From Squalus acanthias (lineage: Eukaryota): a DNA stretch of 64,000 nucleotides. Under the pieces are notes generated by a model. That model made no database searches. It was not told the DNA's origin and was given only the letters and a program-made list of their open reading frames with translations. Both the position numbers and the translations under genes were made by a program. The first letter of the stretch is position 1, and each line of letters starts with the position of its first letter. Below, one piece after another: positions 38,121-49,246 of the stretch. Location: NCBI GenBank assembly GCA_030390025.1, contig CM059453.1, forward strand, positions 6,324,001 through 6,388,000, written 5' to 3'.

Positions 38121-38163
38121 ATGAGGAATTGCGTGCTGCTGCCTCTCTTAATGTTGAGAGAAG
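38121..38163 (+). CDS. Gene B exon 1, signal peptide (MRNCVLLPLLMLRE)
   Basis: ccagccATG Kozak context, hydrophobic core, G|gtacat donor. Same 43-nt length and RE-G ending as the pseudogene C leader exon. Confidence 0.8.
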
Positions 38164-47100: not shown

Positions 47101-49246
47101 CCTTGATCTGATTTTTTTTTTCCATATTCACGCGTATATCCAATTCCCTTTTGAAAGTCACTATTGATTCTGCTGCCACGGACCTACAGGCAGCGCATTC
47201 CACATCACAACTCGCTGAGCTAAAAAAAAACTTCTCACCTCTTATTTGGTTCTTGTCCCAAATATCTTCAATCTGTGTCCTCTGGTTAGCGACACTCCTG
47301 ACAGTGGAAACAGTTTCTCCTTAATGTTGGATCAAAATTCTGCAGGAATTTGATCACCAATATCTAATCTCCCTTTAATATTCTCTACACTCAGGACAAC
47401 AACCCCAGTTTCGCTGAACTGTCTGTTTAAGTTCAGTCCCTCATTCCTCCTATAATTATAGTAAATATGCTCTGTATCCTCTCCAATGCATTGACATCCT
47501 TTCGACAGTGTTATGCACAGAATTGGACAGAATACTCCAGCCGAGGCCTAACAACTGATGTATAAATGTTCAGCTTATCTTCGTTGTTTTCTTAATCTGT
47601 AACACAATTTGTAAAAACCCGGATCAAGTCTGCAATTTCGAAGCTTTAGAATTATTTTACAGTACAGAAGGCGAATATTCGGCCCGTTGTACCTGTGCCA
47701 GCTCTCTGAAAAATGTTTCAAATTTAGTCCCACACCCCAGCTTTATCGAGTCGTCCGGATATACAATTGCACGTTCTTTATTTATTGCATCAAGACTTAA
47801 CAACGCACGTCTCATGCATCAGGGCCATTATAAAACTTGCCAGGGATAAAATAGTAAGATTTTTACTGGTGCAGACAGCACACTGCCATTGCATTCGGGT
47901 CCATATTTTTTTTATTCGTTTATGGGACGTGGGCGACGCTGGCAAGGGGCAAGGCCAGCATTTATTGACCATCCCTAAATGCCCTTGAGAATGTGGTGGT
48001 GAGCCGCCTTCTTGAACCGCTGCAGTCCGTGTGGTGAAGGTAGTTCACAGTGCTGTTAGGGAAGTAGTTCCAGGATTTTGACCCAGCGACGATGAAGGAT
48101 CGGCGATATACTTCTAAGTGAGGAGGGGAACTTGGAGGTGGTGGTGTTCCAATAGGCCTGCCGCCCTTGTCCTTCGAGGTGGAAGTGGTCGCGTGTTTGT
48201 TAGGTGCAGCGGAAGGAGCCTTGGCGAGTTGCTGCAGTGCATCTTGTAGATGGTACACACTGCAGCCACGGTACGCCGGTGGTTGAGGGGGTGAATGTTT
48301 ACGGTGCTGGATGGGGTGCCAATCAAGAGGGCTGCTTTGTCCTGGATGGTGTCGAGCTTCTTGAGTGTTGTTGGAGCTGCACTCAACCAGGCAAGTGGAG
48401 AGTATTCCATCACACTCCTGACTTGTGCCTTGCAGATGGCAGAAAGGCTTTGGGGAGTCGGGAGGTGAGACACACGCCACAGAATACCCAGCCTCTGACG
48501 TGCTCTTCTTACCATACATCTGCAATAGCTCTGTTGTGGAGTATTTTAAACCAACACTCGACACAAGGGTTTAGATCGATAGTCAAGTTGTCTTTATTAA
48601 ACCGGTGGGGAAACAGTCTGCTCTGTCCTAGCCAGACTTCTCCAAATTGTAAAAGCAAACACTACATTTTTATACATTACAAAACACATGGCCATCTCAT
48701 GTTCAATTTATTCCTGCCACCTGATTGGATTTTGGCCAGCATACACCTGTATGGATTGGTTCCGAATCTTAATAAAAACATGTATAAGCTGCCTCTTCAA
48801 ACAATCACTCAAACTGAGGAATGCTGATTAAATGATACCTTATTATGCGACCTAGATAATAACGTTCTTACGGGCAGTTGGAATGCTGGACATCCTGTCT
48901 TCATTTTAAATGTTTTCTATCTTTCCAAAGTTCAGCTATCGTTGACCACATCTTTATGGAATTGGCCCTCCATGTTAGCCCCTGCCTTTTTACACTATTC
49001 AGAGAAAGTGCCAGCAATGTGATTTTAACTCTTCCCCCACTGCAGCTCCACATCTAATACAAATGCCTTCCTTTACAGAGAGACCATCAGTGTACAGAGG
49101 CTGGTCATGGCGCCGCTCAATCGACGAAACCAGCTCAGAATGACGAGATTGTGTACGCGACCGTCAATTTCTCAAACTTACGCAAACATGATCAATATAT
49201 TCAAAATGAGGAGTCCTGCAAATATGCAGCAATGAAACATAACTGA
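38121..49246 (+). CDS. Gene B: complete Siglec-like (MAG/CD33-related-like) inhibitory receptor, V-set + 3 C2 Ig + TM + ITIM tail; join(38121..38163,38800..39180,41365..41676,42226..42483,43399..43686,44456..44549,46851..46938,49079..49246)
   Basis: Eight exons with AG/GT boundaries and compatible phases (1,1,1,1,1,2,0) sum to 1632 nt with no internal stop. Siglec Cys pattern in V-set (GSCAEIRC..QQCSL), domain 2 (TCSITHNCP) and domain 4 (GPTC..NCSC). Tail carries IVYATV. Confidence 0.88.
38800..39180 (+). CDS. Gene B exon 2, Siglec-type V-set Ig domain
   Basis: GSCAEIRCTFDYP...W...GRAEFTGNIAKQQCSLLLNDIRKSDEGTYQF; donor G|gtgagt at 39180. The phase-1 acceptor is the AAG at 38797-38799, so the start is less certain. 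Confidence 0.88.
41365..41676 (+). CDS. Gene B exon 3, Ig domain 2 (C2-type)
   Basis: tag|ACAAGCCG..AAAT|gtaagt, 312 nt; LTCSITHNCP..W..ITFTPSSAHHGKILGC. Confidence 0.9.
42226..42483 (+). CDS. Gene B exon 4, Ig domain 3
   Basis: cag|ATGGA..CAAT|gtaagt, 258 nt; [27 protein letters not shown]. Confidence 0.9.
43399..43686 (+). CDS. Gene B exon 5, membrane-proximal Ig domain 4 (C..CxC type)
   Basis: tag|ATAAAC..AAGG|gtacgt, 288 nt; [24 protein letters not shown]. Confidence 0.9.
44456..44549 (+). CDS. Gene B exon 6, transmembrane helix
   Basis: cag|GAATA..AAAG|gtatgt; [31 protein letters not shown], with no charged residue in the helix. Confidence 0.9.
45200..45262 (+). other. Candidate 63-nt alternative cassette exon with in-frame TGA (gene B)
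   Basis: tag|GCGCCG..CTCTT|gtgagt; reads [16 protein letters not shown]. Confidence 0.55.
45670..46740 (+). mobile_element. Degenerate CR1 3' part, shared with copy A (predates the duplication)
   Basis: [20 protein letters not shown]1 tail. Confidence 0.82.
46851..46938 (+). CDS. Gene B exon 7, cytoplasmic (KKHGDAARVSETHGDLLIYSTAQKALNTD)
   Basis: ttcag|A..GAC|gtaagt, 88 nt, phase 2 to 0; paralogous to 8270-8357. Confidence 0.82.
47907..48512 (-). mobile_element. LINE 3' fragment of a distinct CR1/L2-group family, specific to copy B
   Basis: KAQVRSVMEYSPLAW..LNHRRTVAAVCTIYKMH; polyA end; CCATA on both flanks. Confidence 0.8.
48532..49044 (-). mobile_element. Probable solo LTR, specific to copy B
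   Basis: TG..CA termini, imperfect terminal inverted repeat (TGTTGTGG/CCACTGCA), GCTC duplicated on both flanks, absent from copy A. Confidence 0.65.
49079..49246 (+). CDS. Gene B last coding exon with ITIM IVYATV and distal SCKYAAM
   Basis: ttacag|AGAGAC..TGA, 168 nt, the same length as the last exons of A and C. Confidence 0.88.
   Translation, partial: RDHQCTEAGHGAAQSTKPAQNDEIVYATVNFSNLRKHDQYIQNEESCKYAAMKHN

What the first reader, a model, noticed from the sequence alone, without database searches (positions are those of the whole stretch)
38121..49246. Tandemly expanded family of 4-Ig, ITIM-bearing Siglec-like receptors in a cartilaginous fish
Seen in sequence: three paralogues (A, B, pseudogene C) with a V + 3 C2 layout, an uncharged TM, and a last exon carrying an ITIM plus a distal Tyr motif. 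Established knowledge: the B-strand/E-strand Cys pair with no F-strand Cys, the extra V and domain-2 Cys pair, and the C..CxC membrane-proximal domain (as in MAG Ig5 and Siglec-5 domain 4) are Siglec hallmarks, and ITIM plus TEYSEI-like tails typify CD33-related Siglecs. Inference: this is a shark birth-and-death immune receptor cluster with Siglec-5-like architecture, and not MAG, CD22 or Siglec-15 itself. It is either an ancient root or a convergent parallel of the CD33-related cluster.
Basis: partly seen in the sequence, partly recalled or inferred. Interest (0 to 1): 0.82.

Follow-up and report, generated by a model that had tools for sequence, protein, structure and literature searches.

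The report
Shark Siglec-like inhibitory receptor gene cluster
This stretch of a shark-type genome carries tandem copies of a cell-surface immune-type receptor gene of the Siglec family, real and intact but lacking the usual sugar-binding arginine, and its relatives are already predicted by automatic annotation in other sharks and rays.

Summary
38121-49246 is one intact gene (B) of 8 exons, not 7. All borders are AG/GT and the phases fit: leader, V-set, three C2/I-set Ig exons, an uncharged TM, and two cytoplasmic exons.

Gene A (1-10269) is an ~85% identical tandem copy. Its V exon lies off the window, and its third Ig exon has CG where an AG acceptor should be. Gene C (minus strand, 31.5-25.6 kb) is a decayed pseudogene of a second subfamily.

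Siglec kinship is well supported by Pfam Ig_CD22, the best PDB sequence and fold match (sialoadhesin), the Cys pattern and the tail motifs. The sialic-acid-binding Arg is Ser in B and Ile in C.

Relatives form one elasmobranch clade, seen in 12 species under RefSeq names such as Siglec-5/8/13 or MAG-like. This clade is separate from true MAG and from shark CD22-like proteins. Its C2 domains and tail are nearest to MAG. A link to CD33-related Siglecs is neither shown nor excluded.

No RNA data could be obtained. The scan's first readers had already noted Siglec-like genes 86 times elsewhere in this genome.

The parts
38121..38163 (+). Gene B exon 1: start codon and signal peptide (MRNCVLLPLLMLRE), donor GT, phase 1
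   Evidence: It matches the N-terminus of the Heterodontus relative P0002 in length and sequence.
38800..39180 (+). Gene B exon 2: V-set domain with the Siglec-type Cys pattern. Ser stands at the place of the sialic-acid-binding Arg (codon within 39093-39113).
41365..41676 (+). Gene B exon 3: C2-set domain 2 (C2a) with the extra 'NCP' Cys. Nearest matches are MAG D2 and CD22 d2.
42226..42483 (+). Gene B exon 4: I-set/C2 domain (C2b). Nearest Siglec domain is MAG D4.
43399..43686 (+). Gene B exon 5: membrane-proximal Ig domain (C2c) with the C..CxC pattern, mapping on MAG D5
44456..44549 (+). Gene B exon 6: uncharged transmembrane segment, ends in phase 2
46851..46938 (+). It sets the frame for the ITIM and carries a membrane-proximal Tyr motif.
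49079..49246 (+). Gene B exon 8 (cyt2): ITIM IVYATV, distal CKYAAM, stop. AATAAA lies at 49321.
723..1034 (+). Gene A C2a exon (82.5% aa identity to B)
1622..1879 (+). Gene A C2b exon (83.5% aa identity to B)
2805..3092 (+). Gene A C2c exon. The homologous acceptor is CG instead of AG. In-phase AGs would start the exon at 2823 or 2826.
3904..3997 (+). Gene A TM exon (one Arg near its outer end)
8270..8357 (+). Gene A cyt1 exon
10102..10269 (+). Gene A cyt2 exon: ITIM IAYATV and distal CEYAAI
31141..31541 (-). Pseudogene C V exon (5' border uncertain): frameshift, two in-frame stops, E-strand Cys replaced by Tyr, Ile at the Arg position
27161..27465 (-). Pseudogene C C2a exon: 305 nt against 312 in B, frame lost near the 3' end, interdomain Cys lost
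26108..26364 (-). Pseudogene C C2b exon: 257 nt against 258 in B, two in-frame stops (one at the B-strand Cys codon)
25625..25792 (-). Pseudogene C last exon: ITIM VMYAAI kept, distal Tyr codon turned into a stop

Best explanation
The window holds part of a large cluster of genes for type I membrane receptors. They belong to an elasmobranch-wide clade of the Siglec family.

Gene B is intact and encodes a 543-residue protein: signal peptide, Siglec-type V-set domain, three C2/I-set spacer domains, an uncharged transmembrane helix, and a tail with three tyrosine motifs. Gene A is a young tandem copy and gene C is a dead member of a second subfamily.

Shown here: the gene anatomy, the homology, the duplication and the decay of C.

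Inferred: the receptor sits on leukocytes. When it is engaged, the central ITIM (IVYATV) is tyrosine-phosphorylated and recruits SH2 phosphatases that dampen activation, as in inhibitory Siglecs.

Also inferred: the arginine that holds the sialic acid carboxylate in known Siglecs is Ser in B and Ile in C, and is absent in 19 of 27 relatives. Gene B therefore most likely does not bind sialic acid in the canonical way and recognises something else or binds differently.

Among known Siglecs the nearest by C2 domains and tail is MAG (Siglec-4), but the family is neither a MAG nor a CD22 orthologue.
For: - Exon anatomy with canonical splice sites and consistent phases.
- Pfam V-set E 1.2e-11 and Ig_CD22 36.1 bits against a cutoff of 27.
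- V exon best PDB hits are sialoadhesin (5.2e-12), then JAML, MAG, the sodium-channel beta-2 subunit (five PDB entries), Siglec-5 and CD33. The alignment puts Ser on the sialoadhesin Arg.
- C2a best PDB hits: CD22 d2, Siglec-8, MAG.
- AlphaFold model of the V exon: pLDDT 92.5. The top 4 Foldseek hits are sialoadhesin V-sets.
- Three-Cys V pattern with no F-strand Cys, and the NCP Cys in domain 2.
- A family-only profile (19 proteins) hits MAG ectodomain 3.3e-66, Siglec-8 2.6e-39, CD22 7.9e-31, Siglec-5 6.6e-29 and CD33 8.4e-27.
- Of 423 proteins found by an exhaustive search, the nearest are elasmobranch RefSeq models of the same length and layout.
- The family clade has support 99 in the V tree and 100/99 in the D1-D2 tree.
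- The tail motifs align with those of the family and of fish and coelacanth MAG.
- A versus B: dS 0.156, dN 0.099, ratio 0.64. All six shared exons are open, which argues for constraint after the duplication.
Against: - No transcript evidence. No RNA run was listed, so splicing and tissue of expression are untested.
- The canonical Arg is missing, so 'lectin' is not supported for B.
- The distal motif of B (CKYAAM) and its proximal motif (LIYSTA) depart from ITIM/ITSM consensus.
- dN/dS of 0.64 also fits relaxed constraint.
- Gene A has a mutated acceptor at C2c.
- SH2-phosphatase recruitment and leukocyte expression are inferred from other Siglecs, not tested.
Confidence: 0.8

Rival explanations
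1. The family is the cartilaginous-fish offshoot of the MAG (Siglec-4) lineage. On this view a MAG-like ancestor was multiplied into many fast-evolving receptor genes, and the genes here are many-to-one co-orthologues or the closest paralogues of MAG, not relatives of the CD33 group.
For: - C2a scores 48 bits on fish MAG D2, against at most 26 for any other non-family protein in hand. C2b scores 56 bits on coelacanth MAG D4, against at most 39.
- C2a, C2b and C2c map in order on D2, D4 and D5 in 9 of 10 MAGs listed.
- In the C2b tree, the tree holding family+MAG together has a higher likelihood than the free search (+4.8 lnL, p-AU 0.65).
- The tail shares three motifs and the C-terminal EYAxI(K/R)xK end with fish and coelacanth MAG.
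- MAG is the top PDB hit of the family profile.
- No chondrichthyan protein appeared among the 120 listed of 130 hits to turtle MAG, nor among the 120 listed of 213 hits to coelacanth MAG.
Against: - The D1-D2 tree does not join them, and the AU test is borderline (p 0.073).
- The three-domain supermatrix is star-like (59/15).
- The V domain scores higher on Amia/Coregonus 'CD33-like' proteins and on sialoadhesin (45-50 bits) than on MAG (41 at most).
- Over three domains mouse MAG (142 bits) is no closer than human Siglec-8 (138 bits).
- High similarity may only reflect slow evolution of MAG.
- 10 and 93 lower hits went unlisted, so a divergent shark MAG may exist.
- The MAG set was the largest group scored, which favours its maximum score.
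Confidence: 0.35
2. The family is an early branch or sister of the CD33-related Siglecs, the reader's 'ancient root'. The bony-fish genes named CD33-like, Siglec-5 or Siglec-14 would be its counterparts.
For: - The V exon's best non-family scores include Neogobius, Amia CD33-like, Amia Siglec-14 and Coregonus Siglec-5 proteins (45-50 bits).
- Short ITIM-bearing receptors arranged in clusters resemble the CD33 group.
- The AU test does not reject family + this group (p 0.14).
- Siglec-8 is the second PDB family hit.
Against: - No tree joins them. Holding them together costs 10.3 lnL.
- The C2 domains of these proteins score far below MAG.
- No bona fide mammalian CD33r sequence was in the trees.
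- The RefSeq names are automatic and do not establish that the bony-fish proteins are CD33-related.
Confidence: 0.15
3. The family is an independent old Siglec lineage of cartilaginous fish with no surviving orthologue in bony vertebrates. It would then be a convergent parallel of the CD33-related cluster.
For: - It forms a well-supported clade of its own, on a polytomy with MAG, CD22-like proteins, sialoadhesin and the bony-fish groups.
- All 20 family hits are elasmobranch.
- Arg loss, variation in domain number and pseudogenes parallel what is described for CD33r genes (that description is recalled, not tested here).
Against: An unresolved tree is not evidence for independence. The MAG-like C2 domains and tail point to a nearer relative. 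Holocephalans were not sampled by name.
Confidence: 0.3
4. Gene B is an unexpressed or recently dead copy and the open frame is a leftover.
For: No RNA evidence. dN/dS is 0.64. The distal motif is degenerate. A dead neighbour (C) and a splice-site defect in A show that decay is common here.
Against: - Eight exons are all open, with intact AG/GT borders and a poly(A) signal.
- dN is below dS and below intron divergence in 5 of 6 exons shared with A.
- All structural Cys are kept.
Confidence: 0.1
5. The genes are not Siglec kin but another V+C2 receptor family with ITIMs, such as CEACAM, nectin, JAM or PILR-like.
For: JAML, coxsackie-adenovirus receptor, sodium-channel beta-2, CRIg and PILR V-sets also match the V exon or its model. 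CEA and nectin-1 appear in the profile search.
Against: - Siglecs lead every list. The B-E Cys pair without an F-strand Cys, the interdomain Cys pair, Pfam Ig_CD22 and the tail motifs are all Siglec-type.
- CEA reaches E 1.3e-17 and nectin-1 1.5e-16, against 3.3e-66 for MAG.
Confidence: 0.03

Closest known systems
Myelin-associated glycoprotein (MAG, Siglec-4), above all the fish and coelacanth forms
   Same: Siglec-type V-set and D2 with the NCP Cys. C2a, C2b and C2c correspond in order to D2, D4 and D5. The last domain has C..CxC. The tail has a proximal VIYS-type motif, a central YAxL/VxF ITIM and a C-terminal EYAxI(K/R)xK.
   Different: Four Ig domains instead of five, with no D3 equivalent. 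Many tandem copies instead of one conserved gene. A separate clade in the D1-D2 tree. The Arg of the binding site is lost in B and C. The V domain is no closer to MAG than to other Siglecs.
CD33-related Siglecs (Siglec-5, -8, CD33)
   Same: Short V + C2 receptors with an ITIM and a distal ITIM-like motif, clustered, duplicated and decaying, with loss of the canonical Arg in some members (the last point is recalled for mammals). Siglec-8, Siglec-5 and CD33 are strong PDB hits.
   Different: No tree support for a special tie. The C2 domains are nearer to MAG. The tail has a third, membrane-proximal Tyr motif. No mammalian CD33r sequence could be put into the trees.
Sialoadhesin (Siglec-1) V-set domain
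   Same: Best sequence match (E 5.2e-12) and best fold match (TM 0.79/0.85) of the V exon, with the same GSCxxIxC ... C pattern.
   Different: Sialoadhesin has 17 Ig domains and no ITIM (recalled). Its Arg97 aligns with Ser in gene B.
RefSeq models of elasmobranch relatives, e.g. [quoted passage not shown]
   Same: Same domain order, length and tail. 48-78% identity per exon to gene B.
   Different: Different species or paralogues: no protein in hand exceeds 78% identity in any exon. Some relatives lack C2a or C2b, or carry two C2c domains.

Membership tests
Siglec family (by homology) | N-terminal V-set domain with an intrasheet B-E strand disulfide pair and no Cys at the usual F-strand place | tested here: met
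   Gene B has Cys at the B and E columns and Phe at the F-strand Y+2 column. The B and E Cys are each kept in 26 of 27 family V domains and in all 13 reference Siglec-type rows. The disulfide itself is inferred.
Siglec family (by homology) | Extra Cys in the V domain paired with an extra Cys in domain 2 (interdomain bond) | tested here: met
   GSC in V (22 of 27 family rows) and TCSxxxNCP in C2a, aligned with MAG D2 and CD22-like D2. The bond itself was not testable.
Siglec family (as lectins) | Conserved F-strand Arg that binds the sialic acid carboxylate | tested here: not met
   Ser in gene B and Ile in pseudogene C. Arg is kept in 8 of 27 family V domains and in 11 of 13 reference rows. 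The genes are therefore filed as Siglec-like by descent, not as shown lectins.
Siglec family (as lectins) | Binding of sialylated glycans | not testable with these tools
   Needs recombinant V-C2a protein and glycan binding assays.
Siglec family (by homology) | Best sequence and fold matches are Siglecs | tested here: met
   (Ig_CD22).
Inhibitory Siglecs | Uncharged TM, cytoplasmic ITIM and membrane-distal ITIM-like motif | tested here: met
   The TM of B is uncharged. The ITIM IVYATV fits (I/V/L/S)xYxx(L/V), the consensus quoted in PMC7226832. The distal CKYAAM of B is degenerate, while CEYAAI of A is closer to the family form.
CD33-related Siglec subgroup | Groups with CD33-related Siglecs in a tree | tested here: inconclusive
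   No bona fide mammalian CD33r sequence was available. The family does not join the bony-vertebrate 'CD33-like' rows, but the AU test does not reject it (p 0.14).
CD33-related Siglec subgroup | Lies in the region syntenic with the mammalian CD33r cluster | not testable with these tools
MAG (Siglec-4) | One-to-one orthologue nested in the MAG clade | tested here: not met
   MAG 15 rows 100/100 and family 17 rows 100/99 are separate. There are several family genes per species on one scaffold.
MAG (Siglec-4) | Five Ig domains (V + 4 C2) | tested here: not met
   Gene B has four, and no equivalent of MAG D3.
MAG (Siglec-4) | Expression in myelinating glia | not testable with these tools
   No RNA run was listed.
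CD22 (Siglec-2) | Groups with CD22 | tested here: not met
   Shark and ray 'CD22-like' proteins (about 840-1270 aa) form their own clade, 99/92.

The most novel reading that the evidence does not exclude
Cartilaginous fish may have no conserved one-to-one MAG. Instead the MAG-like lineage would have been multiplied into a megabase-scale, fast-turning-over family of inhibitory (and, by other notes of this scan, activating) receptors, most of which have given up the sialic-acid-binding arginine. That would be an independent, MAG-derived invention of a CD33-cluster-like system at the base of jawed vertebrates. It would suggest that the ancestral Siglec was an ITIM-bearing MAG-like receptor and that the myelin role of MAG came later or is carried out differently in sharks.
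Probability: 0.18. Interest if true: 0.75.

Novelty: new member of a known kind. Interest (0 to 1): 0.5.

Why it matters
The published picture I could find comes from passages of PMC7226832. It says fish regularly have only Siglec-1, CD22, MAG and Siglec-15, and that fish genomes lack inhibitory CD33-related Siglecs. That paper deals with teleosts and never mentions sharks.

A large elasmobranch-wide family of short, ITIM-bearing, clustered Siglec-type receptors shows something different. Either multi-copy inhibitory Siglec systems are as old as jawed vertebrates, or they arose more than once.

Most members lack the canonical arginine. This raises a testable question about what such receptors bind.

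The value is comparative, not mechanistic. The genes work, as far as can be inferred, like known inhibitory Siglecs, and automatic annotation already predicts their relatives.

Tried and rejected
- Expression. The look-up of sequencing runs on 38100-44560 listed no RNA run, so read laying could not be used. Splicing of B, use of the C2c exon in A and the 63-nt candidate cassette remain untested.
I could only note that several family proteins, and in Heterodontus a CD22-like protein, are recorded on the same scaffolds (contig sizes).
- Search for a true shark MAG. Turtle and coelacanth MAG queries listed only bony-vertebrate proteins (120 of 130 and 120 of 213 hits shown). This is inconclusive, because lower hits were not shown.
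- Deep placement. The V tree, D1-D2 tree, C2a tree, C2b tree and three-domain supermatrix all leave the backbone unresolved. The AU tests reject nothing.
- Whole-protein scores were dropped as a measure, because long multi-Ig proteins sum many domain hits.
For the six exons shared by A and B in this window, five of them have nucleotide identity of 0.88-0.91, against 0.84-0.885 for four intron or upstream stretches; cyt1 at 0.84 only equals the lowest of those. The overall dN/dS is 0.64. Only the short cyt1 exon has dN above dS, resting on 1.5 synonymous differences. The claim is not supported here. The V exons could not be compared.
- The CEACAM, nectin, JAM and PILR alternative was rejected on Cys pattern and hit ranks.
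- Rfam found nothing in the window.
- Literature searches: Siglec + cartilaginous fish; Siglecs + evolution + fish + CD33-related + Siglec-15; Siglec + shark; the Bornhoefft 2018 review + Callorhinchus; MAG + elasmobranch or Chondrichthyes. I found no description of this family. The 2018 review is not held; I saw it only as a citation. Supplementary file 9 of the whale shark paper (PMC8455134), which lists Siglec families gained in jawed vertebrates, may bear on novelty.
- The species was not identified. No protein in hand exceeds 78% identity in any exon.

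
Full report
ANATOMY. The window has 42% G+C on average and two N runs. On the plus strand between 38121 and 49246 lies one gene, B, of eight exons. Every border is AG/GT and the phases fit:
- leader 38121-38163, ending in phase 1;
- four Ig exons, all phase 1 to 1: V 38800-39180, C2a 41365-41676, C2b 42226-42483, C2c 43399-43686;
- TM 44456-44549, ending in phase 2;
- cyt1 46851-46938, 88 nt, ending in phase 0;
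- cyt2 49079-49246, with the stop.
AATAAA lies at 49321. Exon lengths add up to 1632 nt, i.e. 543 codons plus stop. Each was searched by itself.

Without it, a TM-to-last-exon splice would read the last exon in another frame that has no ITIM. I found cyt1 by tblastn with relatives from other sharks and confirmed it by splice sites and phase.

Gene A (plus strand, 1-10269) is collinear with B at about 85% nucleotide identity, introns included. Its C2a, C2b, C2c, TM, cyt1 and cyt2 exons are all open. Its leader and V exons lie beyond the left edge. The C2c acceptor of A reads CG where B has AG. In-phase AGs would start the exon at 2823 or 2826, and skipping the exon would also keep the frame.

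Gene C (minus strand) keeps only V, C2a, C2b and the last exon. It has frameshifts (305 and 257 nt against 312 and 258 in B), five in-frame stops, two lost structural Cys, and only 316 nt where C2c, TM and cyt1 should be. A LINE-like insertion sits in its first intron.

IS IT SIGLEC-LIKE? Several independent lines say yes.
- The V exon hits Pfam V-set (1.2e-11) and Ig_CD22 (36.1 bits, cutoff 27). C2b is I-set (2.5e-13).
- Against all PDB sequences the V exon's best hits are sialoadhesin (5.2e-12), then JAML, MAG, sodium-channel beta-2, Siglec-5, CD33, Siglec-7, -10 and -8. C2a hits CD22 domain 2, Siglec-8 and MAG. Among Siglecs only MAG (domain 4) is in the top 60 for C2b. C2c hits MAG domain 5 only weakly.
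- An AlphaFold model of the V exon (pLDDT 92.5, pTM 0.86) is closest to the sialoadhesin V-set (top four Foldseek hits, TM 0.79/0.85). Other V-sets such as CRIg and sodium-channel beta-2 follow closely.
- The Cys pattern is the Siglec one: GSC, B-strand Cys, E-strand Cys, no F-strand Cys, and TCSxxxNCP in domain 2.
- A profile of 19 family proteins, with no MAG in it, finds MAG ectodomain 3.3e-66, MAG Ig1-3 142 bits, Siglec-8 138 bits, CD22 110 bits, Siglec-5 104 bits and CD33 97 bits. Multi-Ig I-set proteins are interleaved because of C2b.

One lectin hallmark fails. The Arg that binds sialic acid aligns with Ser in B and Ile in C.

RELATIVES. An exhaustive HMMER search with the V exon found 423 proteins at E up to 0.001. 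The nearest were named for 30 representatives, and by the list. They are RefSeq models from 10 sharks and 2 rays, of 370-600 residues, with automatic names such as Siglec-5, -8, -12, -13, -14, MAG-like, Schwann cell myelin protein-like and sialoadhesin-like.

Of the 23 hits to the Heptranchias protein P0009, 20 are elasmobranch family members, one is turtle MAG and two are unspecific. Identity to gene B is 48-57% in V and up to 78% in C2b. The species of the window is therefore not among them, or these are paralogues.

Several family genes share a scaffold in each species. In Heterodontus a CD22-like gene is recorded on the same 44-Mb scaffold. Domain number varies: some lack C2a or C2b, and some have two C2c domains. 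In 27 family V domains the Arg column is R in 8, I in 11, T in 3, S in 2, and A, K and L once each.

PLACE AMONG SIGLECS.
- In a V-domain tree of 162 rows, gene B falls in a 29-row elasmobranch clade (support 99).
- In a D1-D2 tree (59 rows, 243 columns) the family (17 rows, 100/99), true MAG (15 rows, 100/100) and shark CD22-like proteins (4 rows, 99/92) are separate. Platypus sialoadhesin is a single row. The backbone is a polytomy.
- AU tests reject neither family+MAG (p 0.073) nor family + bony-vertebrate 'CD33-like' rows (p 0.14).
- Domain by domain the picture leans to MAG. C2a scores 48 bits on fish MAG D2, against at most 26 elsewhere. C2b scores 56 bits on coelacanth MAG D4, against at most 39. 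C2c is a tie at 29 against 28. V scores 41 on MAG, against 45-50 on Amia, Coregonus and Neogobius proteins.
- The three domains map in order on MAG D2, D4 and D5 in 9 of 10 MAGs. In the C2b tree, holding family and MAG together gives a better likelihood than the free search.
- A three-domain supermatrix stays star-like.
- The tail shares its three motifs and its C-terminal end with fish and coelacanth MAG.
- No chondrichthyan MAG appeared among the listed hits to turtle or coelacanth MAG, but 10 and 93 hits went unlisted.

I conclude that the family is a distinct Siglec clade, nearest to MAG by similarity. It is not a MAG or CD22 orthologue, and its relation to the CD33 group is open. No bona fide mammalian CD33r sequence and no Siglec-15 sequence could be brought into the trees.

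HOW IT LIKELY WORKS. What is shown is a type I receptor with a V-set head, three spacer domains, an uncharged TM and a canonical ITIM.

What is inferred from inhibitory Siglecs is this: after ligand engagement the ITIM is phosphorylated by Src-family kinases and recruits SHP-1 or SHP-2, which lowers activation of the cell carrying it. The proximal motifs (LIYSTA in B, MIYSRV in A) and distal motifs (CKYAAM in B, CEYAAI in A) may add to or tune this. Those of B are off-consensus.

With Ser for Arg, canonical sialic acid binding is unlikely for B. The ligand is unknown. Relatives that keep the Arg may be true lectins.

HISTORY.
- A and B are each other's closest relatives (support 96 and 95).
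- dS is 0.156, dN 0.099, and intron divergence 0.125-0.18. This points to a fairly young duplication followed by weak purifying selection, with no sign here of exons evolving faster than introns.
- The duplicated unit runs on past the genes, with a period of about 40.6 kb.
- Together with pseudogene C, which belongs to the second subfamily, and the domain-number variation among relatives, this fits birth-and-death evolution.
- The scan's first readers noted Siglec-like genes 86 times in this genome, from 247 kb before to 1.38 Mb beyond this window and on other pieces. These notes are unchecked.

LITERATURE. Passages of PMC7226832 state that fish regularly have four Siglecs and lack CD33-related ones. 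The words shark and cartilaginous do not occur in that paper. A passage of PMC8455134 lists Siglec proteins among the Ig families that arose in jawed vertebrates. Searches gave no description of this family. The 2018 review by Bornhoefft and others is not held. Supplements were closed.

LIMITS. The species is unknown. The names of relatives are automatic. The MAG set was the largest reference group, which favours its best scores.

Noticed in passing
window 45200-45262 (+), gene A counterpart about 4913-4975: A 63-nt stretch bounded by AG and GT lies between the TM exon and cyt1. It is 61 of 63 identical between B and A, and 93% identical over 165 nt, where neighbouring intron is 84-88% identical. 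Spliced after the TM exon it would read 16 codons to a stop, giving a tail-less form. This is reminiscent (recalled) of the stop-bearing exon that makes S-MAG. No RNA evidence.
   Followed up: partly
window 2803-2826 (+): Gene A's C2c exon has CG in place of the AG acceptor found in B. Two in-phase AGs follow (exon start 2823 or 2826), and skipping the exon would also keep the frame.
   Followed up: partly
window 15512-15642 and 54470-55118: The two N runs sit at homologous places in the two duplicated units (A side 15257-15658 corresponds to B side 54467-55119), next to CT-rich simple sequence. They were not filled or searched.
   Followed up: no
window 50000-64000 against 11000-18400: The A-B duplication continues past the genes, with a period of about 40.6 kb. 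On the B side it is broken by LINE reverse-transcriptase fragments at about 51.1-53.0 kb and 57-62.8 kb (Pfam RVT_1 in 3 of 10 ORFs scanned).
   Followed up: partly
stored proteins P0018, P0101 (Scyliorhinus) and P0050, P0062 (Pristis, Heterodontus): Elasmobranchs have at least two further Siglec-type groups besides this family. One is a set with two or three V-like stretches (about 280-700 aa, named Siglec-8/14). The other is 'CD22-like' proteins of about 840-1270 aa with a second V-like stretch near residue 330.
   Followed up: no
stored proteins P0117, P0139, P0118, P0104, P0148 (Amia, Coregonus, Neogobius, gar): Bony fish carry short Siglec-type proteins with RefSeq names CD33-like, Siglec-5, Siglec-14 or MAG. 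Most have the canonical Arg, and they are distinct from true MAG in the D1-D2 tree. This sits oddly with the statement that fish lack CD33-related Siglecs.
   Followed up: partly
window 28928-31213 (+): LINE-like ORFs (endonuclease/RT-like by eye, no Pfam hit at E 0.001) are inserted in the V-C2a intron of pseudogene C, on the opposite strand.
   Followed up: no
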